A DNA stretch of 64,000 nt from Lepidodermella squamata (GCA_047495785.1 JBLDXI010000055.1:620001-684000), one strand, 5' to 3'. Shown: positions 14,711 through 64,000, numbered from the stretch's first letter. The notes: generated by a model not told the origin, from the letters alone. Translations and numbers: made by a program.

Positions 14711-17387
14711 CGTCTGACAAATGAAGTTCTAATATAAGTATCTACGAATTCAGGATAAAAAAAAGTTAATTACTCTGGCTCATTCAAAATAGAGTCTTAG
14801 GCGATGCAGCTGAAAATAAGGATTGTGAATGAGATCAATCAAGCTGGTGTGTGTCACTTTTCGTCACTAGACGACGTATTATAACGATATAATACGCCGC
14901 CTTTCATGACAATGCCAGCCGCGCGGTTTTTTTTTAACGCAAAGGTAACAAAAAAACCAGGTCCCCACCCACTTATCGTCAATGGCTTCGAGTCACGTGA
15001 ATAGGATGTCGGGGAAGACTTCAACGATGAGAAACACGCGTTGAGAAACTCAGGGACAGCTATATTTATTAATAAAACGGATCTTTCTAATGAAATCGTC
15101 CTTGAAGTGCACGCTGAGCTGAGTATTGCCTGAATGGGAAAGTGCGGTTTGATTGCAAAAAAACGCAACGCTCCAGCATTGCGCTCATGCGCACATTACC
15201 GTTCTCGTTGTTACGTTTATTTTCAATTATTATTGCTATTATTACCTATCGCTCATTACGGCGCATAAAGTTATTGATTCCCAGGTGAGCAAGCCGAGCG
15301 TGACCAAAGGAAAAAATTCGTAATTAAAACTGCACATTCTACTTTATCTACGATTTTTCATCACACTCCTATATATTGCGTTATTTTCGCCACTGTTTCA
15401 TCACTACAGTTTTCAATCATTACTTGCACAACAGCATCGTTTCTTACCGGTTGGTAAAAACAGATCGAAAACATCATCACGCGATAACGGCATCATGGGA
15501 TATGCAGTTAGTGGTTTATAAAATATTAATAAGCAAGCAGAGCTCTGCCATCTGTGCGCTCCTCCATCCTCACAGCTATTCTGTGATGCAAGTCGGAAAA
15601 AAAATCGGGAATTTTCATGATATTTTTATCGCCGTGTCTGATCCATGAAAATATTTAGTGACAGAAAATTCGGACAATTCATGCCGGCAAAAAGCAAGGA
15701 AGCAGAAGTCTTATTTTTGTTCTCGGTGAGTTACTTCCCAAGAGTGCCGCTTTCTACGAATTCGCTGAGCATGAAAAATGAAGATACTTTATTCGCTGGT
15801 TGTTTACACTTCGCGGCAGTAATCTACACAATAGATCTTGCGCATTCCTGACTAAGATGTTTGCTTTCTTCCCTTGATCTAATGTCTTTCCCGTCTAACA
15901 TAGGAGGCGCAAACCTGAAAGATGCATAAGGAAAAACAATAACAATGCAGCGATGATGGCCTTAACTGGCATGAGAAAAACTCGCAAATGAAGGTGCATC
16001 AACAGCTTTTTACCATGTCACAAAGAGCAATCTTTTACGCAAGCCGTATATAAAAGAAGCAATATCCTATAAAAAGCACACGATGAGTCTACTAGGCAAC
16101 ATGGAGAAAATAAAACATATCAACACTAGGTGGCGTTAATTTTCAAATTATGGCTGGTTATTTCCCGCATTAGTGAAGAAACGGTTTTTTATCCCATTAA
16201 CACAACAACCTCCATCTCACGAATATATTTAATTAAGGCTGCGAAGGAAGCTCTGGAGATTAAAATTGAAATACCTCCGAAGCTTAAGAAAGCGCATGAT
16301 TCACATAACGTGATCTTTCGGGTTTGAAAGATCGACAAAATTTAACTGCATCCAGACAAATTGAGGTTGCTGTTGAACTTATAATTTACTCTTACTAACT
16401 TTTCAGTCGATGCTGTGACTAACAAGACAATCAAGTCATGGGAAAATGCACATGAAAACTAATAACACCAGTCATATCTGCGAACGGACAGCAATACGCA
16501 AAAACTCAAGCAGAAAGATGCAGAAGAATAAACTGGCTTTACAGAGTATGGAACACGTCTTGAAACTCAGCTTAGATTTCAGGCATCTGATCTCAACAGC
16601 TATCAACTTGCATCATGCAAGATGACTACTTTGTCGCATTTGATAATCCTACGAAAGGTGTTTGCTAATCAGATTTGATATTGCCCAGCATGCAGCGTAT
16701 AGTGTGTTGGGACGATAAATACATCAAGTCGGAGTTGAAATTATTTGAAAGTTCTGAATTTGAATATTCAGCCCCGATGGATATTTCTACATTCCGCATC
16801 AAAAATCACGGATGGGATCATCCTTGACGTAAATCATCCTCCTGAGAATAAATAAGCACTGCGCTGATTCTACTACCCAGTTTTATATTCCATTTCATTT
16901 GGCCTTACTATCGACTAACAAAGGAGAGTCACCTGCGGAATATACATTTAAATAGCTTACGTATATCTTAACGACAGGACAGTGACACCGATCACCATCG
17001 ATCATCGATCACTTTCATGGAAACAATGAAGCATATGGCATATGTTGTAGAGAATCAAGGCATTTCCGTCTATTACACATTGGGTGGCTTTGAGGGACAA
17101 GTGTACGCGCTTTGGGCGAATCCCACCTTAAAAGCTCTATCGCGGCCAAAGACTAGAAACACGTGTGCTCATGCGTGACATGAGCGCAGTGAAGTGTTTA
17201 GCCATCAGCCCAACCACATTTATCCAATACTTGGCATTTGACGTTCCATCAGCGCAAATTATTTTGTTGTTTTTTTGGCCTCCACAAAAGCAAAGTTGGG
17301 CTGTTTTCCGTCGAACGATCACATATAGCAGGAGGAAATTCGTCCTTTGTCCTTTGCTAGGGCTTATAGCGAGTCTCCTCCCATTGG

Positions 17388-17542
17388 GTTGGTAGAAGTG
17401 TCCTCTCAGACGGCTCAGAGGGCACCCCACCTCCAACCTCTAACCCTAAACCTTACCCTAACCCTAAAACTAACCATAAATCTAACCTTATTAGAGCGAT
17501 CCCTCCGATAGCGGTGCCCTCTGAGACGGCACTTCTAACAAC
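17388..17542. mobile_element. Small MITE-like foldback element with internal degenerate telomere-like (CCCTAA) repeats
   Basis: Left arm gttggtagaagtg..ctcagagggcacc (17388 to ~17426) is the near reverse complement of right arm ggtgccctctgagacggcacttctaacaac (17513-17542). Core ctaaccctaaaccttaccctaaccctaaaactaaccataaatctaacc. Confidence 0.6.
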
Positions 17543-17990
17543 GAAATTGGAAACGGCTACAGCGATTCCGCGTATAGTTGCCATTCGCGTGAACATATTG
17601 CGATTAATGCGATAAATTGGATTGGAAACTCAACTGGGCGATCGAAGCCAGCCTGTCTGCCTGCCGGCACTGAACCGATCGAAGCCAAGCCGATAAAAAA
17701 AATGCAATTTTAAAAATTTAGCGCTTGATTTTTTTGACGGGAAAATACACTTTATATTTTCTAATAATTTATTTAGCTTTTTCAAAATATTTTACAGCAA
17801 TTTATTTCAACAAGTGGCAAATTTTTCCGAAGAAAAGAGGCCGCGGATTTGTTTTGTGCAGTTCTCGGTCTACGTCAGCGACGTAACCTGTTGTGCAGGT
17901 GTTATGTTATGCAAGTGCTTCTTCTTTCGCATGGAAGGCTAGTTTGTTTGAGGATTGGTGTTGTGCGGCATTCTTTGAAATTTTCTGATA

Positions 17991-20900
17991 ATGGAACCCA
18001 AAAGCAAACTTTGCGAAGCCAATCCTCGTGAAAGAGACTCGTGGTTTCTCTCTGGGGGACTATTTGCGCATCGTTCCTGTTGCATGAATATAATCTCATA
18101 CTGCCTTGAATTCATTTTATGGTTTTCTTGACATTTTCACGCCAGCTTTCGATGGATTTATCGGCTTTTAGACTTGATCATGGATATTTCTTGCATTTCG
18201 TCTGCCCAATAGCTGCAATAGTTAGTTAGATGTTATAGCTTATTTCAGATGGGCCTAATCATAATGAAATGGCGGGAAGGTAATCAATTAAGCGATATCT
18301 TTACTTTGAAGATAAAAGGACTCTCAAGGGACTATATTGGTGAATTTTCTCGCGTCTTACTCCCTAAATGTTTTGCATTCCTGTGTAATAAGATCGCCTT
18401 GTTTCAGTATTATAGCCAAATCGAGCCGAATTTGTAACTTTTATTCACATTGATTACCCTGAGATTTCGCCGTGCTGTTTTGTTTTCCGTTTCATCTTAT
18501 CTGCTGTTATCACAAATGCTGTTTTAATAGGGTAGTTATTTGAACGACTGATTGGGAGTGCATTTTAAAGAATAAAACTGGAACCAACAGTCGAGTTTTC
18601 TCCCAACCCCAATCCTCCTGCAGGATCTGGGGAAGACAAGCGAACTCCAGAATATTTGTCTGAACTTTTGCGAGACAAAAAGCTTGTCGAACTACTGAAA
18701 CACACGCTACCATTTTGTCACGTCGAACGGCTTCTGGAAGATGGTTTGTCATAATGTTAATTCATTTTCTAATTTCCAATGCCAATTTCACAACTTTCAG
18801 AGATAACCAAAGTTCGCGAAAATCTCTTTCATCTCAACGGTGTAACTTCACAACCTCTTGATTTGCCCGCTCCGGATGGCGAGTCACAAGTGCATCAGGA
18901 AAAAGTTATGGTTCCAGTCGATCAATATCCCGAGGTAATTTTTTTGCTTTACATTGTTTTTTAAGATGACATTCTTTAATTTATTGCAGTACAACTTCGT
19001 CGGCCGAATTTTAGGCCCTCGCGGTTTGACAGCCAAGCAGCTAGAGCAAGACACAGGTTGCAAAATCATGGTCCGGGGTCGCGGATCAATGCGTGATAAG
19101 AGAAAAGTACGATATATGCATTATACTCATATCACATTGTTCTACATATATGATATTTTCCACAGGAGGAACAGATGCGTGGAAGACCCAACTGGGAACA
19201 CCTCGAAGAAAGCCTTCATGTCCTTATTCAGTGTGAGGATACGCCTAATCGCGCTAAAGTTAAGCTCCAACGCGCGCATGAACTGGTGAAACAACTTCTT
19301 ATTCCAGCGGTAAGCTTCTGAGTTCTTTTAGCATTTACAATACATACGGTGGACAATTTAGTCATAAGTCTACTAGAATCCGGGGTTTGTTATTGACGTT
19401 GTTTGTGTACGTTGTCAAGTGTATGTAATATGTGCCGGCCTATCGTATCTTAATTTTTAGTCAACTGTTTGTAATTTCCATTGTTGTTTTACAAGCCATC
19501 GCGCTAAGCGCATGGTTTCACTCAGTTAATTTTTAAGAAATATATATAAAATGTACATATACACACACAAACACCATAGGAGGAGGGAAAAGACCACTTG
19601 AAGAAAATGCAATTGGCCATTTTGGCTATTGAAAACGACAAATTCCGACCAGCCGGTGGTAAAACCAGCCCTCGAAGTGTGATGGGAACGCCATTAATCA
19701 CGAGTACAAATCAAGCGGGTCCTTCTGCGCCCTCGCCGCTTCCCTCGGGAGCAACACAACAGGCATTCTTCGGAGCTAGCAGCTCTCTTGCATCTCATCC
19801 TGCTGGAGCTTTTGTCTTTCCCTCTGGAGTTGCAGCAGCATCTACTCATTCGCTTTCTTTACCCTGTACGTGTAAAAGTTACTTGAAACTAAACACAGTT
19901 GGCTTCGCTTTTAAACACCAAACCCCAACCATTCGTTGCCCGTAAACCTCCGGCTGCTTCATACTGCCTTTCACACAAACACTGAGACAAAGTTAACACG
20001 GGTTCAGGGTTCATGTTATTCTGAATTAATTTCGTGGTGTATAGCTGGTGATGGATTTAACTCTTGTTTCAGGCTTATCAAGATAACTTCAGGAATCAGC
20101 AGTTGCGCTGGCTGTCTATTTTGAAAAACTTAGAACGTGGCCCGGTAACTGCACAGCCCGCGCCGTTGAATTGTATGCTAGTGCCTAATGTTGCTGTCGT
20201 GAACGCAGCGCCGCTTTCCATTCCTTTCTCTACGACCCCGCAAATCGGTTTTATGACTCCCACCTCGAGTGATGGCTCCCCTTGCACAGCGAACGACTCG
20301 CCGGGCTTGATGAAAGCTGGTTTTCATGATAATGTCCCAATTAAGAAGTGGTCGAATTATGGCGATTTAGTTATGCGGAATAGCGTTGAAGGTTAAATAT
20401 GGCGGAGTATCACTTGAATTTTCATTAACATCATCTAATAACTAACGCCGCACAAAATAATGTATGGTCGGACATTTTTTATTCAAGGTTAAAGGTGTTT
20501 CAATGTTATTTATATGTTAACATTATAATTTAACACTACTTCTAATTTAACATACTCACAAACGCACTTCTATGTTTTGCACTTTCTGTTTTTAACCATG
20601 CACAGCCGGAGGGCGAGGATGACCTCAAGAAAAAACAACTGATGGAGCTCGCAATTTTAAACGGAACCTATCGTGATTCGAAACCTCTTACCGTCGGTGG
20701 TTGTAACACCGCGAGCGCGACAACGATGCTAGCCAGTCCGGTTAGCGCGTTGTCGCCGCCACCAGCCGTCTCGTATCCTACCGTCCAACTGTCGTCAGCG
20801 CGTAAGTGCCGGTTTTCCCCTCGAAAAAATTGCCAGCTCCTCCCCGCCGATAACCCCCTGCACCTATAACCTCTTGTATTAGAAAATCGCAATTGTCTTA

Positions 20901-21661
20901 GATTTGTCCAATTTTCTAGCTCTCGCAAATTCGGGCAATTTCACGCTGGCAAATGTTCAACAGCAAGCTAATGCCGCTAATATTCTACAACTGGGTCGCC
21001 TTCCGCTTCGAATGCCAAGCACTTCTCCGTTCAGTCTCATCCAGTCGGCTGGCGTGACCGCCAGTTCACCGACGATTGATCTGTCGAGTTTTCTCAACGC
21101 GCAACAAGCCGCTGCGCTACAGCAACAACTGCTGATTCCGACTCAGCAGCAAGAGCAGGTCCGTTGCTGGACACAAATACGTTCGTTATTTCTCTACTAA
21201 TAAGACTTGTAATTTTCATAGGCTCATCAATTGACGATAGCTGCTGCTGATTTGCCGCAAATCTCAAATGCGCTCATTCAGGCGGCTCAGCAACAGCAGC
21301 ACCAGCATGCTCAGCTGCAAAATTTGATGGCCCAACAGCAGCAACAACAGGGGCTGCTGGCCCTGGCTCATCAGCAACAGGTTGTGGCTGCGGGCCAAAC
21401 TATGGAAGATCTTCACGCTGCATCTCAGCAATCAGCCGCAGGTTTGTAGACCCGAATATTTTGTTCTGACTAACTCGAAAATTATCGAGGAGCGAACTAT
21501 TTCTAACTTTTGATTAACGGTGTTTGGGACATTTCTTCATGTGTGCCGTGTTGTTTTGTGGTGCAGGGCCCGTCAGAGTGAGTCTGAAATCGGCAATGCT
21601 CGGTGTTGGTGGCGGCGGCGTTGCTGGTTCTGCGCGGCCTCATCCTTACGCGCGGTCGTAA
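17991..21661 (+). CDS. STAR/Quaking-family KH RNA-binding protein (QKI/HOW/ASD-2/GLD-1-like) with three alternative QUA2 exons
   Basis: QUA1 [25 protein letters not shown]; [38 protein letters not shown]; canonical QUA2 [23 protein letters not shown] (20606-20801); Q-rich tail; C-terminal [13 protein letters not shown]. The start exon (17991 vs the ATG near 18269) is uncertain. Confidence 0.92.
19393..19433 (+). promoter_or_regulatory. Putative intronic docking site for mutually exclusive QUA2 exon selection
   Basis: tgtttgtgt (19400-19408) and gtgtatgt (19419-19426) are complementary to sequences upstream of each of the three QUA2 exons. Confidence 0.55.
19580..19865 (+). CDS. Alternative QUA2 exon A of the STAR gene
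   Basis: catag|GAG acceptor; [24 protein letters not shown] aligns to QUA2; ends T|gtacgt in phase 1 (286 nt). Confidence 0.75.
20073..20391 (+). CDS. Alternative QUA2 exon B of the STAR gene (most diverged; may instead be a terminal exon ending at TAA 20396)
   Basis: tttcag|GCT acceptor; [22 protein letters not shown] aligns to QUA2; G|gttaaa phase-1 donor (319 nt). Confidence 0.62.
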
Positions 21662-24540
21662 CGGTGAAATACGTCTCGACTTGTGATGTATTTTTTCAAA
21701 AAGCCATAGATTTTAACGGTTTGTTTGACGAATTTCAACTTTCAATTTTTCTATTAATAATAATAATGCGCAATAACTTTCTTGAAATCAATTTCCCGAT
21801 TAGTCTTTCTGAAAACATTTTTAACAAGAAAATATCACTCGTTTTTTTCTTAACAATAACCAACAAAAACACGGCGATAAAAGTTACATTTCGAATGCTC
21901 ATCAATTTCGGTGCATGGCGGCTTAAGCAGGGGGAGGCAAAATTTACATTGAAAATCAATAGATCATTTGTTGAAGGCACCCCTCACTTTAGTCGAACCC
22001 CGGTAGAGCCTATTTAACTGCGCAGATTGAGTTGACTTATAATAATAACTTATAATTTATAATTGTCTTGCATTTTTATTACTAATTAGTATAACAACCA
22101 CAGTAACAACCAGCACAACGAAGGATGATGATGTCCAACTACTATACTATCAACCAACATGCTACTACTGACTGTTAAAATCCGTAAAACTTCACGTTGC
22201 ACTCGTTGCCGCTGCTCTATCATGATGTGACTTGTATCTATACCTTGAGGCTGTTAAATAATCCAATCTAAACACGTCAGCGCGACCTATCCAGTGTTTC
22301 ACGCCGCAACTTACGCTGATTTGTTTGTTTGGTTGCCGCTGTTGCTGCTGCTGATTATGATGATGCTGCTGCTGAATTTGTTGCTGGCTAAAATTTACGT
22401 TTAACGCTGTATTTAATATTGTCCAAACATCAAAACCTCTGGTAGTTCCAAACTTTACTTCCAATGTCAACATCAACTTCTATCCTCCTGTACTTACTGA
22501 ATGCACTTCCATTTTAATATGCTAGGCAAACAACTTTTGAGAACAAAATTTTTGACAATTTCTTCGCTAATAATGTGCCATTGTTGATTAGCGAAATAGA
22601 GATTACCTACTGCTATCTATACTATATATTTAATTCTGATAAATCAACGAAAATTTAACACGGAGCAAAATAATCAACGAATTGTAACCAAACTAATTTC
22701 CGATAGATGGATATAACACAAACAAATGTTCTTCCTTTTCTAGCCGTACTTTGGCGTGCGTTCCTTTTAGAACCAACGGATATTTTTTTTCGCTAAATTT
22801 AACAACGCGCCAATTTTTCAAATTTTCACGAATCTTCCAATTTACATTTGATTTGTAAAAGAACCTGCTGATGCTGAAGATTTTATATTAGTAATTTAGA
22901 TTGCTTTTGGCTTCTTTCGCAAACTCTGCTCTTCCATTCTCATCGAACGTTATTTACAGGCATCGATGGAGAACAAAAAAATATTATAATAATTTTTCTT
23001 CGGGGAAAAACTGCTGGTTGCATTTGAGAAATTGTACAGAAATATTATATACTTGAATATATATCTATATTATTGATGAAAAATGTTTGTGTGCCATCAA
23101 ATTTATTATTACTTGATGCCTTGATCCTAAAAGAGGAAAAATATTAGCCAATATATACACTTTCTTCAGAGAACTGCTGATATGAAGAATTAGGCTGAGA
23201 AATCTTTATTCTTGCAATACGCGACTTCTTCAAGTATAATTATATGTGTACATATATTCGAAGTGTGTCAAAAATTGTTATGATTTTTGGGTTTTTGTTT
23301 CTTTCTGCGTCTGCATCGCACGGGTAAAAATATTTGTTGTATAATCGCGTCACGCGCGACTAGATTTTTTTATTTTGGTTTCTATCAAAAACGAGAGGTA
23401 AAAATCAACACGAATTTTCTTGTGTAAATCGGTAAGCTATTCTTATAAATCACTACTACTCATCTGGTGCGGTATTCTTCTCCCACGTTCTTTTCTGCCA
23501 GCTCTATTTCAGATGATTCGACCTCATCTCTCGAGTGAAATCTGAGAAAATATTACATACATACCTTGGCGAATTTTGAGAGGCTTGTTTCTTAGTTCAA
23601 TTTTTACGATCCTCGCTGCTATCCTCCTGTGCGATGGACCATTTTACAAGGAGCAGGAACGCATCTGCACCGCTGATTTTGGTGCGAAAATGCCCAAGTA
23701 TGATAGCGTTTCGTGTTGTTTTAAGACCAAGCGCAGCGCGATGATTTGTAATCACTAGCGCGGGCCCAATTTTTGCTGTTAGCGCCGACTTTCCACGTGG
23801 TAAACGCGCGATCTTTCGCTCTTTTCTGTTATTATTTTCAGCGCTACTATAAATATATCGTTTTTAGTATACTCGGTTTGTTACACCGAATGCGAATCTC
23901 GTTCTTGCATCTCGCCGGGCTGCTTTAGACATAATATTTTTCAGTAGTTTACGCGTCGGCCCTGGTACATCGAAACTTGTAGTTGCAGTAGTAAAATAAT
24001 AACCGCAGTCGTCGTGATGATGGTATTTTGTGCCGAGAAAACGAGAAAGGAAATAACAAGGCTCGTTAGCCTTACATACGCGCGCTACGTGTACGATACG
24101 TGGAGAAAATTATAGAGTAAAGCAAACAAAAGAGATATTATGCTATGTATATATTCATCGCCCTCATCATCGATCATGTGCTTCAGAAGACAACAGGAAT
24201 GAATGATCTGAACATCCCTTCTCACTGCATTTCCTACATCTGCTCGCTCTCTCATCAACGTAATTATAAAGATAAACATACAAAAATTACCGCAACTTTG
24301 CTATTATCCTTATTTACTACCTTCTATGTATACAATGCTAGTGTTAAAAATGTAAGAAAGAATAAATAATATCGCAAGTATTTCTCTTTTTTTTCTCTCT
24401 CTCTCGTTCTTCTTCATCCTATCTCTCTTTATCTATCTGGCGGGACTTGTTTTCTGCGTTTTCATCACAGTTGATGATGACAGTGTGACGTCTATGATTA
24501 TGATTAAATGCATTTTAAATTGAAAAAAGAATAAAAGGCG
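21662..24540 (+). other. Probable long 3' UTR of the STAR gene
   Basis: About 2.9 kb of AT-rich sequence with no credible ORF; AATAAA at ~24361 and ~24529. Confidence 0.45.
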
Positions 24541-25469: not shown

Positions 25470-26713
25470 TCATGATTGATTTTTAAAACCAGCACTCAGT
25501 AATATGCGTTTGATGTCATCGTTTTGAGTGACTTCGAAAGCTGTTTGACCATCGACAGTTCGAGCGTTCACATTAGCCCCGCACTGAATCAGCAGTTCTA
25601 CGGCGCTAAGCTGGCTGTGGTTTGCGGCGGCAATTAACGCGGTTTGGCCAGCCAAATTAGGCGCCTCCAAATCCGCGCCGGCGTCGATAATCATCTTAGC
25701 TACCAGACAATCGCCGTTCATCGCAGCCCAGATTAGAGCAGTCATTTTGGTCGCAAACGTGCAGACGTTAACATTGGCTGATCGCGATAGCAGCTGCGAG
25801 ATGATATCAGCATTGGCGTGGTTAAAAACTGACCACAGCAGCGGCGTATACCCATTTGCCAGGTCTTGTACATTCACCTCGGCGTTATGGTAGAGCAATA
25901 ACTCCACAGTTTTCCACTGCTTCTCCTGACAAGCTCTAAGCAGAGCGGTTTGGTGATAGAAATCAGAAGCATTCACCTCCGCGGCGTACTTTATTAGCAA
26001 TTTAACGGTGTCCAAATTAGGCTGACCTGCAGCTTGTATTAAGGCGGTCGTTCCGCTTAGGTGAACAGCATTCACGTCCGCGCGGTAAGTTTCAACCAAA
26101 ACTTTGACAATATCAAAATAGCAACCTCTGGCCGCCGTCATCAGAGCGGTTTGACCGTATTTATCGCGTGAATTAACCGGAATTCCAAGGTCATCTAAGC
26201 AAAATCTGATGGCTGATAAATTTCCGCTACTTGCTGCGTAGTGTAGACAATTTTTGCCACCCTTGTCCCGAGCCATAACAGCAGCGCCGTTCTCAACCAA
26301 CAACCTCATCACATCTGTCAAACCGTTCATGGCTGCGTATGCCAAAGCAGTCATTCCTTCATCATTGGCAGCATTTACGTCGGCATCGTTTGAAATCAAC
26401 AAGTTGATCATTTCAATGTTACCATGACAGCATGTGTGCATCAAGGCGGTTGTGTTCGCACGGTTTTTCGCTAAATTAGGATCGATTCGTTTGTCAAGTA
26501 TCAGCCAATTCACCTTCTCAAAGTCGTTATTCACAGCCGCCAAGAGAAGCTCAGTAGTTTCGCCGTCCTCCTTATTGATAAAGAAAAATCATGCGATATA
26601 ATTCATATTTTTATTCTTCAAACTTTGAATCTTTTAGCATGGATCTCAGGTTCCCGCAGCTGTTCGCCGGATTCATTGCCTGGCGATTCTGATCTGGGAG
26701 AGCCGACTGACAT
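25470..26713 (-). CDS. Ankyrin-repeat protein 1 (~10 repeats; short leader exon + one large exon)
   Basis: Repeated TAL..AA..G....V..L...GADVNA units; leader MSVGSPRSESPGNESGEQLREPEIHAKRFK|GT spliced in phase 0 to EDGETTELLLAAVNN. Confidence 0.9.
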
Positions 26714-28248
26714 GATACTGCTTGATGATTCTCGCGCTCTCTTCCCACCGCTGCTGGCCATTGCTCGATCCTTGCCAACAAACGTTTCTCAAGGGCTAAA
26801 TTAGCTTATTAAGGGAATAATTGTGGTATCTTTACTCTCGTTATAACCTTCGAGAGGCAGATAAGGTATTAGCTTCAGCCACACGATCCAGCATATCTTT
26901 ACTGCATTGCCTTGTACTATTTGATAAGGAGGTTACGAGGGTGTAGCGGTGAGCCATTTCTAAATGACGGTGTGACTCGCGGCATGTGCGAGCGGCGACC
27001 ACATTTGCCGTTGAAAATCTGTAACTGTAAAAATAAGACTGAAATCTATGAGACTGAAAAATTGAAGAGTAAATATCGACCTGAAACGCTCTGAAATATC
27101 TGAACCTCTGAAAGGTGTAGTTAAAGAGGTAGGGATATATAATTAAAAGGACTTGAAGGAAAAGTGAAAAGTCCCAGGGTGAAATCTGATGCAAACAATT
27201 ATGAGTAGGTACGTATCCAAGAAAACAAATAAAATCACTGAACTCGCCAACAACTAGGGAGCTAGTATTTGATCATTCAATTCAATTTCGAATAGCTAGG
27301 CTTGCGCTTCGAACCGAGCCAGCTCGAAGGATTTTCGCAACCTTTGCAACAGGTGTTTCGTTGGTCCTCCGCTTAAGAGCCAGAGCCAAGCGGTGACCAA
27401 AAAGTCCATCTTGGCAAAAATGTACAAAATTAGCCATTGCGTAAAAGATCTTTGATCGTCAAAAAATGACCCTTGATGGTTTGAGGTTTTAAGATGGGCT
27501 CTGAAAATATTTTGAGAATGTTTTTGGGAAACTTGTGCAGTTTGACGTTAACAAGCTTGTTTGGAATTTGCTTCGATTTTATGAGTTTGACGTTAATAAC
27601 TTGATGAATTTTGTTTCAAGGGAATTCGAATCTTTCTGAACCTTTTCTCAGTTCTCAGCTCTTGTGTTCGGTTTTCATGGCAAATTTGTTGAACGCAATA
27701 TCGATAAAAAACCATATGGCTAGCGCTCGATCGGATTCGGCTAGAGACGTCGGCGAAAAGCGTAGGTATACTGTAGAAAGTTTACGTTAACGAAGGAAAA
27801 TCCCATCTTCCCATATAATTTCGTTGGGACCGGCCAAATTTGTTTACTAGGCGAAAATTGCACAACATCAAATCTATGATGAGGGCTGACTGTAGTTTCA
27901 TTTAGCAGGCAATTCGCCGTTGAATGTTGAGAACAAGGTCTCCAATGATATCTCCACGAGATAAGTAACGAGACTAAGTTCAAAAACCACTTCGATTCTA
28001 CGACAAATAACTCATGCATGCATTATAACTCTCCGCGTTCTTCGAATTTCTTGTGGTTGTAGGTTGCAGTGGCACCAAAGGATTTGGCATCGAATTATCT
28101 TCATGCAAAAACAAGTGTCCCTAATGATACTGTTTTTTTATTATTATCACAAATTTATCTATCCATTTATTACAACATTCAACTCTATAAACAGCCGTGA
28201 AACGGAATGTGTGCTAGATTTTATCAGACGGATGCTAAAGTCCGAAGT

Positions 28249-29534
28249 CTAAATACTTTTTTTGCCAACTGGTTGTTTGAGAGCGGCAAGAATGACACCT
28301 CTGATAGAGTCGTCAGTAGCCAAGTCGAGAGCTGTTTTGCCGTTTTCGTCAACAGCGTTCACGTTGGCACCGCTATTGATAAGAAGCTTAGCAACCAAAG
28401 TCCTGCCAGAGGATACAGCGGCTAATAAGGGTGTACGCTTGCTGCCGTGAACGTTGTCGTGAATTTCTAGATCGGCACCCTTCTCGATAAGCAATTCGAC
28501 AGTTTCCAGGCAGCCGTTTTCAGCTGCCCACGCCAAGGCAGTATAACCCGCATCTGTTTTATCGTTGACATTCGCACCTTTTTGAATGAGAACACGAACC
28601 AAGTCTTCCTGACCGTTCAGGGCGGCTTCTAACAGCGGCGTGAAGCCGGCCAGAGTTTCTTTCGCATTGACATCAGCACCATGTTCTATGAGGTATTTAG
28701 CTGTTTTCCAACACTTCCTCTCCAACGCGTGAATTAGCGGTGTTCGCTTGTACTGAAGAGTCGGCGTATTGAGGTTCGCACCGTGTTCTTTCAACAGTTT
28801 AACTGTGTTTGGATTTTTTAAAGCCGCAGCAAAAAATAACGGGGTATAACCGGCTCGGTCGGCGAGGTTTACATCAGCACCATAGGTTTCGACGAGAAGT
28901 TTTGTAACCTCGTAGTGATCGAATAAAATTGAGCCAATAAGGGCCGTGCCGCCGTACTTATTCACGTCCTTATTCACGTCAATTTTGTGCTCGGATACCA
29001 AATACTGGACGATGTCGCGTTTGCCGCTTCTCGCCGCCCAATGCAAAGCGTCGAAGCCGCTGGTGTCTCGCGCGGCGACATCGGCGCCATGAGATACCAA
29101 TAAGCGAAATGTGTCAAGCTGGCCATGCACCATCGAAGCGTATATCAATGCGGTTCTACCATCCTTATTCACCGCGTTCACTTCAGCGCCGTGCTCGAGA
29201 AGAGATTTGACTAAAGGAAAGCTACCGGCAAAACCCGCCTCCATCAAAGCAGTGGTTCCATAGTCGTTTTTAGCTTGATTTGGATCGACGCCCATGTTGA
29301 GAAGATTGAAAGACATCTTGATTTCGCCCTGTCTCGCAGCGTGATAAAGCTGAAGAGCTGCTTTTTGATCATAATCCGGCTGCATGTTAACAAATAAAAA
29401 CAATGCTTTTGAACTACAATAATGCTCACCTTGCTCTGTTTTTTATTTGTCTCCCCAGAGGCTTGTTGAGCTGCAGGCACCAATGATTCAGCTGCAACGT
29501 AACCATTACTGAGTTTTTCGCTATTTCTCTTCAT
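28249..29534 (-). CDS. Ankyrin-repeat protein 2 (~10-11 repeats; short leader exon + one large exon)
   Basis: Ankyrin consensus throughout; leader MKRNSEKLSNG..NKKQSK|gtgag spliced to cag|PDYDQKAALQLY; paralog of 25470-26713. Confidence 0.92.
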
Positions 29535-41052: not shown

Positions 41053-44000
41053 ATGGAGACAACAAAACCGCCCGACTCGTCTCCGGTTTCGAATGGAAAT
41101 AATGGCATCGGGGATGATGCGATGGCGGCCGGATTGCCGTTCGACCCATCCTCCATGGCAGTTAACAATCGCGTTTCAACGCTCGACGCGTGTTACGAGG
41201 TTGTGAAGGAAAAACTTGAGAGACTTCGCGAAGAAATTCGCCGCATTCGCATCAACAAGCAACAAGAGCAACTTCATCAAAATATTCAGGTAAAAATAGG
41301 CTCAAATTGAAATATTCTAAACCTAGTTATCTATTGGTTTCAAACGAAAATTTAACCAAATTCAAGATAAATAAGTATGTGATCGATCTTGAATCTTTTC
41401 AGGCAAAACGATACTCGGTGGATTCTTCTGGAAGCAGTTCGACGACAAGCCAGCTACTGATACCGCCGACTTTACCCGGTTCAACTCTCAGCAGTCACTC
41501 TCCCACCAATCCTTCGTCTCCGTCACGGTTGCGACATCGGATCGCTACTCGGCCACGGCAGCTGGAGCATCAAGATGCTTTAGCCAGTCGGTATAACTCT
41601 AGCAGCAATGACGAAGGAGCCGCGGACGAAGGCAACGCAGCGAAATCTAATAACGCCCCGCGGTCAAGGCGCCAACAAACCGAGGTTACCTCGCAAAACA
41701 GCACATTGAAACGGTCTCCGAAATTAGCCTCGAAACCTCGTTTAGCAAGGCAGGGTGACGTTAGTGGGAATGCCAACGACTCCGCTGCTAACAAAGATGG
41801 CTCTGAATCTCCGGTTTGGGTGCCGAATACCAATAACCCGCAACCACCACCAGCTAGTCGCCATAAATCGCTCAACGCCAGGGTTAGCACATCGCCGACG
41901 AACTTGATCGGCAACCGGGCGCGGTCGAAAACCCTGCGCGAATCGCCGCACCCTACCCGCCTGGTCGCCGAGCGTAGTATCGACGACGGTACCGGCGTCT
42001 CATCAGCGCCGCAGCACGGCGGTCTTTCTTACCAAATCGTTGGAGAAAATTCGCCCACTGTCAACAAAATTTTCCTGACGTCACCCATTGTAACCAACTC
42101 TGGGCCTACAAATGTCAGGTCACCCACCATAATTTCATCCAACACGCTACCGAAGGTGCAACAAGTCTTGCCCGTGAACGGCCAGCAGTTTGATGATATT
42201 TTCAAGAGCTCAAAGGACACGGCCGATAAACCGGTTCCGGCTTTGAGGCCGTCGCTTGCTAAGATCAAGGCGCTTGAGGCGAGTGGGCGGGCTGGCAACA
42301 GCACCCGGTTGAGTAAGGGTGAAACCACCCCCACGCAGGTTCCTCTCGCTCAACAAGAGTCGACTAGCGACGCTTCTTTGCTTGCTGAACCTTCGAAGCA
42401 GAATGATGAATCCGCGAGGCCGAGAGCTGGCTCTTTACAGTCGACCCCATTGGTGCTTTCAACTGTGGTTTTGCCGGGCGGTAGCAGCAGCAACCAGCCA
42501 ACTATTACAGCGCCACAACCGCCTCAGCAGTTTCAGCTGCGACGGCCGCCGCGAAGCTTCACAGTTCGAACCAATGCCACGCCGGAAAATGAACTTGAAC
42601 CTCCCCCGCCCCACCCGGCCGGTCACAGCATGTCAGTTTCGCCTCAGAAGCACCTGTTAATGCCGCTGCCCTCTTCGGGTGGCCATTCGGGTAGTAAAGC
42701 TCTTACTCCGTCAATGCCTCTGCTGAAAAACGAGCAGCATTTGCTTCAAAACATCAATTTATCGATGCCAGCGCCTTCGCAGCAGCATCATCCGCCTAGG
42801 CAGTTACTTTTGGACGCAAAAGTTGTGTCACCCCAGGCCAAGACGTTACCTGGCCCGGTGAAACAGCAAGCGGCTAATAAGCTGGTTTCAGCGATTATGG
42901 GTGTACCTAGTAGTTTGTTGTCGAACGACAGTTCTTCGTACGAGAATTTAGATCAAGTTTCATCGTCTGGTGGCTCTACGTCGGCAGTGCCGCCGTTTCC
43001 GTTGCCTAGCAACAACTCGTCTTCAAGCGCTTCGACGCTCTCCGCTGCTTCTTCCTCGCTACCGCAGACTACGAAGCCGCGGTCCGAGGTGCCGAGTAGT
43101 GAAAACAGCAGCGTTAATAACAAGGTTAACAGCAGCAACGGGGCGCCGTTAACCGGTTCGGCAGCCTTGTTAGCGAAACAGCAGTTGATGCAGAAGCAAT
43201 TGCAGCAGTTACAGCAGATGAAGCAAGCTATCACTACGCCTACACTGCCGCAGCAACAACAACAACAACAACAACAAGCACCGCCGCCTTACAGTCAAAA
43301 TAATAACAGTAATAACAATGTACCATCATCGGCTGCTGCGGTCAAGCCCAATTCATATCCGCACCATCAGCCGATGCAGCAACAGCACCATCATCAGCTG
43401 CAGCAGCGGAAGTCAGCCGTCTTGCCGTCGGAGATGGAGCACAAGCAGTCTCGAAAAAATTTCGCTCTTCAGCGTAATTCGGTCGACCTCGCGTCGCCTA
43501 CTTTTTCCCACGCTTACCAGGTGCGAAAAAAAAAGAAAAAAAATGTTGAAAAAATTATTTTTGTCCGAAACTAGGATACTGATTCTGAGTTGGAAGGAAT
43601 TTTCGGTGAGTGTGAGGCAATTGATGATTTCGAAACATCGACTACGATGAGTGACTCTCCGTCCCTATTCACCGATGTGACAATTTGGCCGGTGATGATT
43701 GGGAATAATGTCGTAGCGACGAAGCGCCGGCCTCGCGCCGCTGCGCAGCAACAACCGGCTCGTAAAAAAGACCCGCCACGGGTAGCCGACGCTACTCAGG
43801 CTGCTCTCATGGCTAATCGACGCGGCAGTTTAGCTCGACCTCGCCCGATGACAGTGGGCCGTTACAATACATCCGTAGCACCGTCATCTAATAATCGGGT
43901 ATGTGCATTTTTCTGGGTAAGAGGACATCGGACTCGCTTTGGGTCATACCCAAGATTTGAAAAAATCATTCCAAAATGTTCGGTAATTAGGGAAGACTTT

Positions 44001-46987: not shown

Positions 46988-49441
<2,454 letters not shown>

Positions 49442-53940: not shown

Positions 53941-56900
53941 TCAGTATGGTCTAACTGTAGCAAAAACGCCGCGTAGATGCCAGCGATTAGCTTGAATACC
54001 ATCGCGACGTAGCAGAACTTCGAACAAAGGCTGGCCACTTCGCGCTCTAGTTGCGTAGACCGGACAGCTATATTGCTCCAGTGCCTTAGCCAGTTCCTTT
54101 GAACATAAAAAATAACATTAAGAAACGAAATCAAGTATTCAGAGGCTAAAAATTATAAAAAATAAATAAATTGCTAGAAAATAAAAATTAAATAGTGCGC
54201 AAATTGATTCAAAAAGCCTCCGAACCTTTCCAGTAGGGTGTTTACCCTTAACCTGCGATTAATTTGATCAATCATTTGATTATATTTTTTAGGTAATTTC
54301 GCTGAAATTATTAAACTAACCAGGCTCGGTTTTTCTGACGCCGGAATACAAGTAACGTGAATGACCGGCAATTCAGCTGGGTACCGCCGGCTGGTGGTGT
54401 CGAGCAGTTCGTTGACTGCCTTGTCCCAACCGCAGCTCCACAGGTGGAGGCCGAATACGAACATGCCTTCCTGAGGCGGGTCTCTCAAGTGGTCTTTATC
54501 GCGGGCTGTCAACTCGGTGTGGAACACCAACGAGTCAACAGCGCCAGACCGCAGCACGCCGTAGTACCTGAACGCGTCCTGTTTCATGAGGGCGAGCAGG
54601 GCCTGAGGCCGCGTGAACGCACCCAGCCAGTAGGCGGGTGTTTTCTCGCGGCCGAGCAAGAACAGCCGCTCGAGAATGGAGACGCGGTGGGCGAGATCGG
54701 CGACCCACGTCGCGATGCCTAACGTCTCATCGGGCGCGGCGTCGCCACTCAAGCGAATCCAATTTTGTGGGATGCGGGCGTTGTACAGCGACGCGGCTAC
54801 TTTTATCATATCGTCATCCAACTGCCAGCCGAAGGTCGCCAATGTCAGACTCGAACGTAATTGCTATCGACGAGAAAAAACGTGGCAATTTCACACCCTG
54901 GTAACTCAGGCTGAAACAATAGTACGTACCGTTAGGTCGGAACGAATGCCGTTAACGACCCCGTAAAGGATCTCCATTTCAGACAACAGGAGCATGTTGA
55001 AATTGGTCATGCCGCCTATTTTCTTCAGCTTTTCGACCAAATAACCGCGCGAGTATGTGCGCGGCAATTTCGATAAAATTGCCGAGCAAACATCGGCTAG
55101 CTCCACGTCTAGCGGTACCGGTCGGGTTAGCAACAGGGTGGCTGATGCGTTAACACCCTTCGCAAGAACGTGGGGTAGCAGTGCGTTAATCGAAACAGCA
55201 GCCAGCGATGTTTCTACGCAAAAATTGATGGGAAAAATTGAATGAAAAAACGATTATTATTACCAGTGTAAGAAGCTGGGGATTCTTGGCCTTCGAGTTT
55301 CGCCGCCGCAGCAATGGCATCTCCACTCAAAACATCGTACAGCTTGTTGATCCTCGTGAGAACATATTGGTCATCGCCAAGATAATTCTGAAAAATTAGA
55401 AGTAAAATTCATCGGAATGCTCAATTTTTTAATCGAAATAAAGCATCGATTTCACGAGTTCAAAGGTCTTATTTTTCGTTTTTAACAGATTTAACTAAGG
55501 ATTACTGCGGGAAATCAAACAAGATTCGGCCGCGATCCAGCTACAAAGAAAGAATTTTCGAAAAGTAGAACTTACGTAAGGCACTCGTAGCTAAATTATA
55601 CAGGAGAGTGAGTAAACATAGAGGGGAGGGGAGGGGAATTGGAGGGTGTAGCGTGTGTGGGACAAAAATGTAAAATTTTGCCTAAAAGAGCTCCTACCGT
55701 AGAAATAATATTATAAACTAAAAAATATTACGACTAATAAAAAATTAAATGGGGCGGATACAACTGAAAGGCAAGTAAGTAACAACGGGTATGGCAACAA
55801 ACCAAAAACTGCTGATCCTGAATAGCGATAATCAACGACGACATTTAGACATGCAAGTTTCATGCAGTTATAGATATAACAAGCAATACCAGGACAAATT
55901 TCCTAGTGATAGGAAATCAATTTTTACCTCTCGAACTGCGTGGAAACCGCCGGTATCAGGCACTTCAAGCTGGAACTCGGCTAGGTTGTCAAAAGCTCCA
56001 GCAATAGCAGCTGGCTTCAATGGGCCAGGTTGGAACAAAATCGACGGTGGTTTGTATTTCACTAAAGAAAAAATAAAAATAAAAAAAAGTAATCAATAAT
56101 TTGAAAAATATTTGAGCTCACGTTTTGTCAATTCGAACTCGCGTTTGATAGCATTCAACGACAGCCAAGTATCAACCAAGGCTGCTAGCGTGGCTCGGTC
56201 GGTTTCTTCCGTCAAATACTTGCCATAAATCTCTGTTACAGCATGCCGGATGTTAACCCACGGCAATTGAGTGCCTCTCGGAACTCCCGGGGCGGGAATC
56301 GCTGGGGTCTGAGATGTCGGCGCCGTACCAGTGTCAGTGTCTATCGACGGCCTGGCAACAGCAGTTTTCTCCGACAAAACCAGGCCCTGCGTACCGCTTG
56401 ACGTTAAGGTGGCTGCACGGGGTATGATGATATTCGCGACATTCGTCGACGGCTTGTCGTGCCCGTCCATCAAACAGTTGACGACCAGGGTGAGGCAATC
56501 GATCAAATCTGAATGCGAGACCATGTTCAACTGTTCAGGACGCGACCAGCCGTAAGACCCGTATCGAGCCCTAAGCCGAATAGCCGAGTGTAAAAAGCAC
56601 AGATTATGCACCAATACAGGCCATTCGGGCCGTGGTGACTGGCGAAGCTGGTCTGGGTGCAGGGTGATTAAACTGTGCACCAAGCTAGATCGCATCAATC
56701 TCGGCGTGTCGACCAGAACGCGAAGCGTGTGATGCAAAACTTCGATTGGGACTGAATTTATATCACTGGCATCCATTGATAACACGCATCGGAAATTCGC
56801 TGGTTTGTTCTCTATTTTCCTGATGCAGCTGAGAAGGTGACCAAAAAAGTTGGGATTCCGGCCGATTTCCCGCACGAGGAGCCAACCGCCTTTAGCTGCG

Positions 56901-62900: not shown

Positions 62901-64000
62901 TAATTTCTGAAATCACGAACGTGTAGTTCAGTAGCCTCAGATAACAAATTTGCTATATCCTCAAACACGATGTGCTTCTAATAATGGTGCATCAAAAATA
63001 ATGGGAGAAATAAAAATTACCACTATACTCAAATTAAAATAACATCGATTTATTACCTGTAGCAAGGCTTCAAGTTCGTCATTCGACAAAAGCTGGTGGT
63101 GAAATGATGACACGAGAATGCTGTTGAGTAGATCCCACATTTTGGGCTCGCGAAGTTCGGACGATTTCACGATAATTGCGCGATTTGAAGGTTCCAGTCC
63201 AGTGACCCGAATCAGCGACCGCATATCAGCCAGGAAAGTATCACTCGTCGACGTATCAATGTCGCAAAGCTGGGTGTCTGCAATATGCAACGACAGCCGG
63301 CAGAGTTCAATGATTTTGAAGCCATGTTGAGCCAGCAGTAGTAACCGGCAGCTGTCAGGTTTTGTCAACAATCGATGCATCCGAACGATTTGCTCCAAGA
63401 TAGCGTCAGTCAACGCAACATCGAAATCGCGGTTAGAAACGTCTTCCATGTAATGGGTCAGGTATTCGTTGACATTATCACGAATACTGGCGATGGATTC
63501 AACGATCGTTAGTTCAGACTTTTCGCGGAATTGCGTTTTCTGAGGGTTCTTGAATGCCGAAAATTCGGGGATAGTGACGAAAATCTGAGCCAACTTTGAA
63601 GTCATATCAGGCCAGCGTTCGTTAATTGCATTGTCGACAATCGACCGGAACCAGTAAATATCGCTGGCTCGGCATAAGCGATCGGCAAATGTCCGCATCA
63701 TCTCGTGTCTCCAGTACGAGACAACGTGAATCACGTCGCCGCGGTGCTCATCTTCAAGTCGGCGTAGAGATTGGAAAGATGCGACGAGATCGCGAACAGA
63801 GAACAGGTAGTGAGTTCTACCCGGGCACGGGGCTGGTTTCAGAACGTTAACAACCTCATTCAAGACATTGCAAGCCGCTGATACTAACGAGCTATGCAAG
63901 TCAATCTCGAGCAACTGGCCCTGACCGCTATGCATGGTTTGATTAAGGATCGCGCTCAGGACGGATTTCAACTCGTCACCCTCCGGTGCGTTAAGGTGGA
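53941..64000 (-). CDS. Divergent axonemal-type dynein heavy chain, 3' part (AAA3 lid to C-terminus); 5' end lies beyond the window
   Basis: PCPGRTHYLFSVRDL (cf. PTP.K.HY.FNLRD), YWRHEMMRTFADRL, stalk coiled coils, AAA5 WPLLCDP, AAA6 GGWLLVRE..LCFLHSAIRLRARYGSYGW, C-domain PPQEGMFVFGLHLWSCGWD, and last exon YSCPVYATRAR..RWHLRGVFATVRPY* (stop 53941-53943). Confidence 0.88.

What the first reader, a model, noticed from the sequence alone, without database searches (positions are those of the whole stretch)
20420..20600. Dense cluster of STAR-type binding motifs directly upstream of the canonical QUA2 exon (possible autoregulation)
Seen: within 180 nt, CTAAT (20435), ACTAAC (20441-20446), CTAAT (20542), TACTCA (20553-20558, overlapping selector C) and about five TTAAC. 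Established: QKI/ASD-2/HOW bind (A)CUAAY and GLD-1 binds UACU(A/C)A, and QKI binding upstream of an exon generally represses it. Inference: the canonical isoform may bind here, mask the branch point and selector C, and divert splicing to exons A/B as a feedback loop.
Basis: partly seen in the sequence, partly recalled or inferred. Interest (0 to 1): 0.7.

Follow-up and report, generated by a model that had tools for sequence, protein, structure and literature searches.

The report
STAR-site cluster between alternative QUA2 exons
A 214-base intron between two alternative exons of a Quaking-type RNA-binding-protein gene holds the densest run of that family's binding and branch-point motifs in the 64-kb window, so self-regulation of the gene's splicing is plausible but unproven.

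Summary
YTAAY occurs 8 times in the 214-nt intron 20392-20605. Dinucleotide shuffles give 2.9 (P about 0.003), no AT-matched window exceeds 5, and it is the top window on either strand.

RNA contigs show that the intron lies between two of three alternative QUA2 exons: A 19580-19865, B 20073-20391, C 20606-20801. All three use one donor (19309) and one acceptor (20920).

The cluster has two parts:
- **5' part (20425-20461):** a bipartite Quaking response element, 34-70 nt after the weak donor of exon B.
- **3' part (20510-20559):** the branch-point zone of exon C. It lies in a 109-nt AG-free stretch and was enlarged by a 13-nt tandem triplication.

Only one strict ACUAAY and one UACUCA are present. 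Half of the TTAAC signal is also seen on the antisense strand.

Autoregulation fits published QKI and ASD-2 rules, and the gene holds two more well-flanked sites at its 3' end. It could not be tested. No close relative was found, and four mollusc-like loci with tandem QUA2 exons show only branch-point-level motif counts before those exons.

Verdict: a real, lineage-specific motif cluster. STAR self-regulation has about 40% probability, and plain branch-point redundancy is nearly as likely.

The parts
19580..19865 (+). Alternative exon A: a divergent QUA2 ([23 protein letters not shown]), 286 nt, length 1 mod 3.
   Evidence: RNA contig joints 19309->19580 and 19865->20920; translation.
20073..20391 (+). 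Alternative exon B: a very divergent QUA2, 319 nt, length 1 mod 3. Its donor AAG|GTTAAA is weak. An in-frame TAA at 20394-20396 follows if the donor is not used.
   Evidence: Joints 19309->20073 and 20391->20920; sequence; translation.
20392..20605 (+). The intron between exons B and C, which holds the whole motif cluster. It is 70% AT with 8 YTAAY and 11 TAAY.
20425..20461 (+). 5' sub-cluster: TTAAC (20425), CTAAT (20435), core AACTAAC (20440-20446) and TAAT (20458). Together these form a bipartite QRE-like element 34-70 nt after the exon B donor.
   Evidence: Among the 45 ACTAAY cores in the window, this is one of the best flanked by half-sites.
20482..20493 (+). Copy of the exon B donor (TTCAAG|GTTAAA against TTGAAG|GTTAAA at 20386-20397). 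It holds the last two AG dinucleotides before the exon C acceptor.
   Evidence: Direct repeat D4; AG scan.
20494..20603 (+). AG-free zone of 109 nt before the exon C acceptor, the longest among this gene's introns.
20510..20552 (+). 3' sub-cluster: a 13-nt unit (TTATAATTTAACA) in three copies, carrying TTAAC x3 and CTAAT x1.
   Evidence: Direct repeat family D1.
20553..20559 (+). TACTCAC, the most likely branch site of exon C, with its A 47 nt before the AG. The 59-nt intron 19107-19165 has TACTCAT as its only such motif.
   Evidence: This is an inference; the branch point was not mapped.
20564..20592 (+). Pyrimidine tract made of a 14-nt unit in two copies.
   Evidence: Tandem Repeats Finder.
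20606..20801 (+). Exon C: the canonical QUA2 ([24 protein letters not shown]), 196 nt, length 1 mod 3, with a perfect GTAAGT donor.
   Evidence: Joints 19309->20606 and 20801->20920.
22040..22089 (+). Second motif cluster in the same gene. TACTAAT abuts the acceptor of the 3'UTR intron (ATTACTAATTAG|) and has 6 TAAY within 40 nt, the best-flanked core in the window.
   Evidence: joint 21718->22090.
22692..22697 (+). ACTAAT core with 4 flanking half-sites in the 3'UTR.
   Evidence: the RNA contig covers 22089-23700.

Best explanation
The B-C intron is a composite splicing-control region of a Quaking/HOW/ASD-2-type gene. The gene encodes its QUA2 helix in three alternative exons.

**3' half (20494-20603).** This is the branch-point zone of exon C. 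It holds several redundant YUAAY and UACUCAC branch sites and a duplicated pyrimidine tract, all inside a long AG-free stretch.

**5' half (20425-20461).** This is a bipartite Quaking response element just after the weak donor of exon B.

**Proposed mechanism.** Branch-site motifs and STAR motifs are the same sequence. I therefore propose that the gene's own nuclear product competes with SF1/U2 at the 3' half, which lowers use of the exon C acceptor. I also propose that it binds the 5' element, which helps the weak exon B donor. High STAR activity would then shift output from the canonical isoform C towards B (and A). That would be a negative or cross-isoform feedback loop.

**Shown:** the exon structure, the motif positions and the enrichment.
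**Inferred:** binding, the direction of the effect and the feedback.
For: - RNA joints prove three alternatives between one donor and one acceptor, all of length 1 mod 3.
- YTAAY density is the maximum of the window and exceeds shuffles and AT-matched windows.
- The sense strand holds 8 YTAAY against 4 antisense, and 3 CTAAY against 0.
- The core plus half-sites match the QRE definition.
- The three best-flanked sense-strand cores of the window (22081, 20441, 22692) all lie in this gene's transcript. A rough hypergeometric estimate gives P about 0.003.
- The protein ends in RPHPYARS, a PY-type nuclear signal.
- Published rules fit: tandem ACUAAC branch sites bound by QKI block SF1 (PMC13004596). 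ASD-2 at CUAAC repeats represses a 3' splice site and switches between exon sets (PMC3469465). QKI motifs sit near weak 5' splice sites (bioRxiv 10.1101/2025.09.04.674271). Qk isoforms regulate their own RNA (PMC5695090).
- The region is not a repeated element within the window.
Against: - There is only one strict ACUAAY and one UACUCA, and neither is enriched.
- Five of the eight motifs are UUAAC, which carries the UAAC half-site but not the ACUAAY core.
- Three TTAAC and one CTAAT come from a 13-nt tandem triplication. The two halves of the intron may be an old duplication, so the counts are not independent.
- TTAA-richness is strand-symmetric.
- YTAAY is also the ordinary branch motif of this gene's other introns.
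- Four mollusc-like loci with tandem QUA2 exons show only 0-3 YTAAY before those exons.
- No close relative was available for a conservation test.
- The two strains laid show no variants here, but only about 0.4 were expected.
- There is no binding or perturbation data.
Confidence: 0.4

Rival explanations
1. This is ordinary branch-point redundancy plus replication slippage. The 3' motifs are alternative branch sites for exon C, read only by SF1/U2. They were multiplied by small tandem duplications in an AT-rich intron. The ACTAAC group is a chance or relic branch site. The STAR protein does not act here.
For: - YTAAY and TACTCAY are the branch-like motifs of the gene's other introns.
- The 13-nt x3 and 14-nt x2 tandem units explain part of the count.
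- The AG-free zone of 109 nt fits the class of exons with distant or multiple branch points (PMC1431707).
- The strict STAR motifs are not enriched.
- Distant relatives lack the cluster.
Against: - Even with the duplicated copies collapsed, about 6 YTAAY remain, above the maximum of 5 in AT-matched windows.
- The densest window of 128 kb of strand space falls in the STAR gene's own alternative-exon cluster.
- The gene holds two more well-flanked cores.
- The 5' group lies outside the AG-free zone, so it cannot be a normal branch site for exon C.
Confidence: 0.35
2. The cluster is a device that keeps exons B and C mutually exclusive. Branch-like sites and a copy of the exon B donor (20482-20493) close to the real exon B donor recruit U1, SF1 or U2 unproductively. 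Alternatively, they place the usable branch point too near the donor. Either way the B-to-C intron is not removed and the two exons are never joined.
For: - ACTAAC lies about 50 nt from the exon B donor.
- A donor copy follows a T-run and an AG.
- No B-to-C joint is among the listed joints.
- Joining two exons of length 1 mod 3 would shift the frame.
Against: - The 214-nt intron has normal branch candidates 47-85 nt from the acceptor, so steric blocking alone cannot work.
- Two joints were not shown.
- Frame shift plus mRNA decay would hide B+C products anyway.
Confidence: 0.1
3. The cluster is the target of another RNA-binding protein. The repeated word is UUAACA(Y), at four of the five TTAAC sites, within a UUAA-rich stretch. 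A Sam68/T-STAR-type protein (U(U/A)AA repeats, PMC4735526) or an unknown factor could bind it, rather than the Quaking-type product.
For: - TTAACA is the most over-represented 6-mer: 4 observed against 0.5 expected, P 0.001.
- There are 7 TTAA in 214 nt.
Against: - No such factor is identified in this genome.
- The CUAAY sites and the full QRE are not explained.
- Three of the four copies are in the tandem unit.
Confidence: 0.1
4. The stretch is the 3' untranslated end of a short isoform. When the exon B donor is not used, the frame stops at 20394-20396. The product would lack the C-terminal nuclear signal, and the motifs would act as 3'UTR STAR sites.
For: - A stop codon lies 3 nt into the intron.
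- RNA contigs cover the intron at low depth.
- QKI and HOW make short cytoplasmic isoforms by 3' end choice (PMC5695090).
Against: - There is no AATAAA or ATTAAA in 20392-20605.
- Intron depth is like that of other introns of the gene, so it may simply be pre-mRNA.
Confidence: 0.05

Closest known systems
ASD-2 (C. elegans Quaking-type STAR protein) acting at CUAAC repeats in unc-60 intron 1A and in let-2 (PMC3469465)
   Same: - A STAR protein motif is repeated in an intron next to a 3' splice site.
- It is used to switch between mutually exclusive exon sets.
- The proposed action is to block that 3' splice site.
   Different: - There the targets are other genes, the repeats are strict CUAAC, a partner (SUP-12) binds beside them, and binding and function were shown.
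- Here the target would be the STAR gene itself, only one CUAAC is present, and nothing is shown experimentally.
QKI against SF1 competition at tandem ACUAAC branch sites (RAI14 exon 11; eLife 2026, PMC13004596)
   Same: - Branch-site motifs double as Quaking sites upstream of a regulated exon.
- Two elements, or a core plus a UAAC half-site, are needed.
   Different: - In RAI14, both elements are full ACUAAC within about 60 nt of the acceptor.
- Here the only full core is 160 nt away, with two AG dinucleotides between. The acceptor-proximal motifs are CUAAU, UUAAC and UACUCAC.
Autogenous regulation of mouse Quaking isoforms (Fagg et al. 2017, PMC5695090)
   Same: - A Quaking-type protein acts on its own RNA through its own motif to balance isoforms.
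- This gene also has well-flanked cores in its 3'UTR and at its 3'UTR intron.
   Different: - Mouse isoforms differ in C-terminal tails and share one RNA-binding domain, and the known self-site is a 3'UTR UACUAAC.
- Here the isoforms would differ in the QUA2 RNA-recognition helix.
Fox-1/Fox-2 self-regulated skipping of an RRM exon (Damianov and Black 2010, cited in PMC5695090; not read here)
   Same: A splicing factor uses its own motif in its own pre-mRNA to make isoforms with an altered RNA-binding domain.
   Different: - Fox uses exon skipping that removes part of the RRM, not a choice among three versions of a helix.
- The comparison rests on the reference and my own knowledge.
Exons with long AG-exclusion zones and distant or multiple branch points (Gooding et al. 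2006, PMC1431707)
   Same: There is a long AG-free zone (109 nt) with several branch candidates before an alternatively used exon.
   Different: That class is defined in human genes and needs no STAR protein. It is the ordinary reading of the 3' half.

Membership tests
Bipartite Quaking response element (NACUAAY, then 1-20 nt, then UAAY) | Core ACUAAY on the RNA sense strand | tested here: met
   AACTAAC at 20440-20446 on the + strand. The strand is transcribed.
Bipartite Quaking response element (NACUAAY, then 1-20 nt, then UAAY) | UAAY half-site within 1-20 nt of the core | tested here: met
   TAAT at 20458 is 11 nt downstream. TAAT at 20436 and TAAC at 20426 lie upstream. The chance of such a pair in this intron is about 0.02-0.1.
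Bipartite Quaking response element (NACUAAY, then 1-20 nt, then UAAY) | Bound by a Quaking-type STAR dimer | not testable with these tools
   Needs EMSA or CLIP.
STAR-dependent intronic splicing element (ASD-2/QKI type) | Several strict CUAAC/ACUAAY copies close together | tested here: inconclusive
   There is one ACUAAC and two CUAAU. The other five are UUAAC, which carries the half-site only.
STAR-dependent intronic splicing element (ASD-2/QKI type) | Lies beside a regulated splice site | tested here: met
   It lies between the exon B donor (20392) and the exon C acceptor (20605), both used alternatively.
STAR-dependent intronic splicing element (ASD-2/QKI type) | Conserved in related species | tested here: inconclusive
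   No close relative was found. Four distant loci with tandem QUA2 exons have only 0-3 YTAAY before those exons.
Branch-point region | yUnAy motif inside the AG-free zone, followed by a pyrimidine tract and AG | tested here: met
   TTAAC x3, CTAAT and TACTCAC lie at 20517-20559. The pyrimidine tract is 20564-20596 and the AG is at 20604-20605.
Branch-point region | Branch nucleotide mapped by lariat reads | not testable with these tools
   Only contigs were available, and no back-joining reads were listed.
GLD-1 binding motif UACU(C/A)A | Motif present above chance | tested here: not met
   There is a single TACTCA at 20553. About 6% of all 181-nt windows have one.
Autoregulatory splicing loop of an RNA-binding protein | Own motif in own pre-mRNA at an alternative exon that changes the protein | tested here: met
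   The alternatives replace the QUA2 helix.
Autoregulatory splicing loop of an RNA-binding protein | Isoform ratio responds to the protein's level | not testable with these tools
   Needs knock-down or over-expression.

The most novel reading that the evidence does not exclude
The two motif classes in the intron are read by different isoforms. The classes are CUAAY with a canonical 5' context (3 sites) and U-rich UUAACA (5 sites). The KH domain reads UAAY and the QUA2 helix reads the bases 5' of it (GLD-1 and SF1 work, PMC4081071). Swapping the QUA2 exon would therefore change which sites the protein binds on its own pre-mRNA. The result would be a three-way, isoform-specific cross-regulatory switch in which an RNA-binding protein re-tunes its own sequence specificity by mutually exclusive splicing.
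Probability: 0.08. Interest if true: 0.85.

Novelty: new variant of a known kind. Interest (0 to 1): 0.45.

Why it matters
Many RNA-binding proteins control their own splicing. In the known Quaking cases the isoforms share one RNA-binding domain.

Here the regulated choice is among three versions of the QUA2 helix, the part that sets the 5' end of the recognised motif. If the cluster is a self-binding site, the protein would feed back on its own binding specificity rather than only on its amount or location.

This is directly testable with three recombinant STAR domains and two short RNAs. If the cluster is only a set of branch sites, it still shows how branch-site multiplication by small duplications accompanies a regulated exon in a phylum (Gastrotricha, according to earlier unchecked notes of this scan) with almost no splicing data.

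Tried and rejected
1. **Conservation test.** This failed for lack of close relatives.
   - A word search with the exon C reading frame gave only 18 short ORFs that share the QUA2 part alone.
   - The exhaustive search with the last KH exon gave no hit above 77% identity.
   - A profile of a full-length relative plus the window's exons gave nematode, mollusc and arthropod proteins. None matched exons A or B, the tail of exon C or the next exons.
   - One contig (P0001) had no DNA on hand.
2. **RNA structure.** The intron folds no better than shuffles (z -0.09).
3. **'Selector C' pairing.** A duplex search between the first intron of the cluster and the exon C region scored no better than shuffles. 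The first attempt timed out.
4. **Repeated element.** No other copy exists in the window.
5. **Rfam.** Nothing was found in the window.
6. **Gene-wide excess.** Sense against antisense is 34 to 20 YTAAY, which roughly ten branch sites largely explain. I rejected this as separate evidence.
7. **Second-densest + strand window (17405-17604).** It is a telomere-like CCCTAA run, not a STAR site.
8. **Polymorphism as a sign of constraint.** Too few variants for any power.
9. **Literature.** Searches for mutually exclusive QUA2 exons found no report.

Full report
**1. What is at the coordinates**

- CTAAT at 20435
- ACTAAC at 20441-20446
- CTAAT at 20542
- TACTCA at 20553-20558
- TTAAC at 20425, 20517, 20530, 20547 and 20592

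The acceptor AG of the canonical QUA2 exon is at 20604-20605. The exon starts at 20606 and encodes [24 protein letters not shown].

**2. The gene and its alternative exons**

Run X1 gave contigs with GT..AG skips, so it is RNA-derived. The joints define these exons on the + strand:
- 18531-18743 (QUA1)
- 18801-18934
- 18990-19106
- 19166-19309 (end of the KH domain)
- three alternatives
- 20920-21158, 21222-21441, 21567-21718 and 22090 onwards

Each alternative is joined from 19309 and joined to 20920:

| Exon | Coordinates | Length |
|---|---|---|
| A | 19580-19865 | 286 nt |
| B | 20073-20391 | 319 nt |
| C | 20606-20801 | 196 nt |

All three lengths are 1 mod 3. All three isoforms keep one open frame that ends in ...RPHPYARS, a PY-type nuclear signal as in QKI-5 and HOW(L).

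Exon A is a recognisable QUA2 variant. Exon B is much more diverged. Junction contig depths were about 16 (A), 14 (B) and 40 (C). Contig depths are only a rough guide.

The finding's stretch is therefore the intron 20392-20605. It lies between the exon B donor and the exon C acceptor.

**3. Is the density more than chance?**

In the 214-nt intron (70% AT):

| Motif | Observed | Dinucleotide shuffles (5000) | P |
|---|---|---|---|
| YTAAY | 8 | 2.9 | 0.003 |
| TTAAC | 5 | 0.95 | 0.001 |
| TAAY | 11 | 5.0 | 0.004 |
| TTAACA | 4 | 0.5 | 0.001 |

- None of 339-489 windows of matched AT content reaches these counts; the maximum for YTAAY is 5.
- Over the whole 64 kb, on both strands, this is the top window for YTAAY and TAAY.
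- Among the gene's own introns longer than 100 nt, the density is 0-2.4 per 100 nt, against 3.7 here.

The strict motifs tell a weaker story. There is one ACTAAY (P 0.27) and one TACT[AC]A.

**4. What inflates the count**

- A 13-nt unit (TTATAATTTAACA) stands three times at 20510, 20523 and 20540. It carries three TTAAC and one CTAAT.
- A 14-nt pyrimidine unit stands twice at 20564-20592.
- The exon B donor word TTGAAGGTTAAA recurs as TTCAAGGTTAAA at 20482.
- The two halves of the intron align weakly (P 0.01-0.05).
- TTAA is palindromic. There are 7 on each strand, and the antisense strand has 4 YTAAY against 8 on the sense strand. CTAAY is 3 against 0.

With the extra tandem copies removed, about 6 YTAAY remain. 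That is still above every AT-matched window, but the sites are not independent events.

**5. Anatomy: two sub-clusters**

The last AG before the acceptor is at 20493. This leaves a 109-nt AG-free zone, the longest of the gene's introns. Inside it lie TTAAC x3, CTAAT and TACTCAC, followed by the pyrimidine tract.

The gene's other introns use TTCTAAT, TTAAT, TACTCAT, TTAAC or TACTAAT in branch position. The 3' sub-cluster is therefore first of all a redundant branch-point zone. TACTCAC, with its A 47 nt from the AG, is the most likely branch site.

The 5' sub-cluster (TTAAC, CTAAT, AACTAAC, then TAAT after 11 nt) lies outside that zone. It is 160 nt from the exon C acceptor but only 34-70 nt after the exon B donor. 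That donor is AAG|GTTAAA, one of the poorest matches to GTAAGT among the gene's ten donors. The exon C donor is a perfect GTAAGT. The 5' sub-cluster meets the sequence definition of a bipartite Quaking response element.

**6. Other evidence**

*For self-regulation.* The window has 45 ACTAAY cores on both strands. On the + strand, the three best flanked by TAAY half-sites are:
- 22081, with six half-sites, abutting the acceptor of the 3'UTR intron
- 20441, with four half-sites
- 22692, with four half-sites, in the 3'UTR

All three lie in this gene's transcript. AT-richness of untranslated parts contributes to this, so I treat it as moderate support.

*Neutral or negative.*
- The region has no significant fold.
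- It has no copy elsewhere in the window.
- I found no support for a special long-range pairing of its 3' part.

**7. Relatives**

ORFs that share the QUA2 exon led to loci L001, L002/L003, L004-L006, L007 and L008/L009.

L001, L002, L004 and L008 carry two tandem canonical QUA2 exons about 220 nt apart, each of length 1 mod 3. L007 carries a single QUA2 exon. Mollusc QKI models (oysters, Pinctada, Mytilus, Biomphalaria, Nucella) contain both copies read through. The exon duplication is therefore older than this genome.

Their introns before and between these exons hold 0-3 YTAAY, which is branch-point level. Pairs of CUAAC or ACUAAU occur in two of them. The dense cluster is therefore not shared.

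No close relative was found by three protein searches. This fits earlier unchecked notes that the genome is a gastrotrich. Conservation, the most useful computational test, could not be run.

**8. Mechanism**

Established knowledge:
- SF1 and Quaking-type proteins read the same branch-site word. QKI bound to tandem ACUAAC, or to a core plus a UAAC half-site, blocks SF1 and represses the downstream exon (PMC13004596).
- ASD-2 at CUAAC repeats represses a 3' splice site to switch between exclusive exon sets (PMC3469465).
- QKI motifs near weak 5' splice sites promote inclusion (bioRxiv 10.1101/2025.09.04.674271).
- Mouse Qk isoforms regulate their own RNA (PMC5695090).
- The QUA2 helix tunes recognition of the 5' end of the motif (PMC4081071).

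Applied here, the nuclear product would help the weak exon B donor through the 5' element. It would hinder the exon C branch zone through the half-site array. Output would move from C towards B and A.

I put this at about 0.4. The reading that the motifs are only branch sites multiplied by slippage is about 0.35. Smaller rivals are:
- a device that prevents B-to-C joining
- another protein that reads UUAACA or UUAA
- the 3' end of a short isoform that stops at 20394-20396

**9. Novelty and score**

Self-regulation of a Quaking-type gene through its own motif is known. The new point would be that the choice concerns the RNA-recognition helix itself. The evidence is motif statistics plus position, with no binding, perturbation or conservation data. 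I rate it as a new variant of a known kind, with interest 0.45.

Noticed in passing
L001 6217-6570; L002 2017-2360; L004 6016-6340; L008 3866-4210; proteins P0195, P0194, P0188, P0191, P0216, P0232, P0207: Two tandem canonical QUA2 exons, each of length 1 mod 3 (109-127 nt), occur in mollusc-like contigs. Mollusc QKI gene models read both copies through with odd linker residues. The QUA2 exon duplication seems widespread in molluscs and mis-annotated. I found no paper on it.
   Followed up: partly
window 18529-18660: The RNA contig starts at the acceptor 18529/18530 with 23 letters that are absent from the window, probably a spliced leader. Between that point and QUA1 there is an in-frame stop (18566-18568) and no ATG. 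A CTG at 18578 in AAAACTGG context is the first plausible start. Alternatively, another 5' exon joins at the strong acceptor at 18622.
   Followed up: partly
window 21659-22092: The stop codon (21659-21661) lies 57 nt before the last exon junction, so the last intron (21719-22089) is in the 3'UTR. Its acceptor reads ATTACTAATTAG|, with the ACUAAU core too close to the AG to be its branch site, and six UAAY lie just upstream. RNA contigs also run across the donor unspliced. This is a second candidate self-regulation point.
   Followed up: partly
window 17405-17530: A degenerate telomere-like run (CCCTAA/CTAACC units) sits at 17440-17490, between inverted arms at about 17405-17430 and 17505-17530, upstream of the gene's first mapped exon.
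   Followed up: no
window 19947-19956, 20603-20612, 19650-19660: CCTCCGGCTG in the A-B intron is perfectly complementary to the exon C acceptor (CAG|CCGGAGG) and 91% complementary to a word inside exon A. About one perfect 10-mer pair is expected by chance in 1.6 kb, so the significance is unclear.
   Followed up: no
window 20441-20494: ACTAAC is followed 40 nt later by a T-run and AAG|GTTAAAGG. This is an acceptor-like site abutting a copy of the exon B donor, which looks like a recursive splice site. No read evidence supports it.
   Followed up: no
window 16394-16460: Three ACTAAY lie within 70 nt on the + strand, the first as TTACTAACTTTTCAG. This is a yeast-like branch site plus acceptor of an unidentified + strand exon upstream of the STAR gene.
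   Followed up: no
window 25470-29403 (-), 48476-49438 (+), 54174-63971 (-): Neighbouring long reading frames are two ankyrin-repeat exons, a homeodomain exon and dynein heavy chain exons. A 755-aa frame at 41307-43571 has no Pfam match.
   Followed up: no
window 19410-19524: The DNA run X3 holds two alleles of this stretch of the KH-A intron. They differ by 5 substitutions and a 5-nt insertion. The RNA run X1 carries four of those substitutions, seen near the end of one short, low-depth contig. It is a local hot spot of polymorphism in an otherwise nearly invariant 5.9 kb.
   Followed up: no
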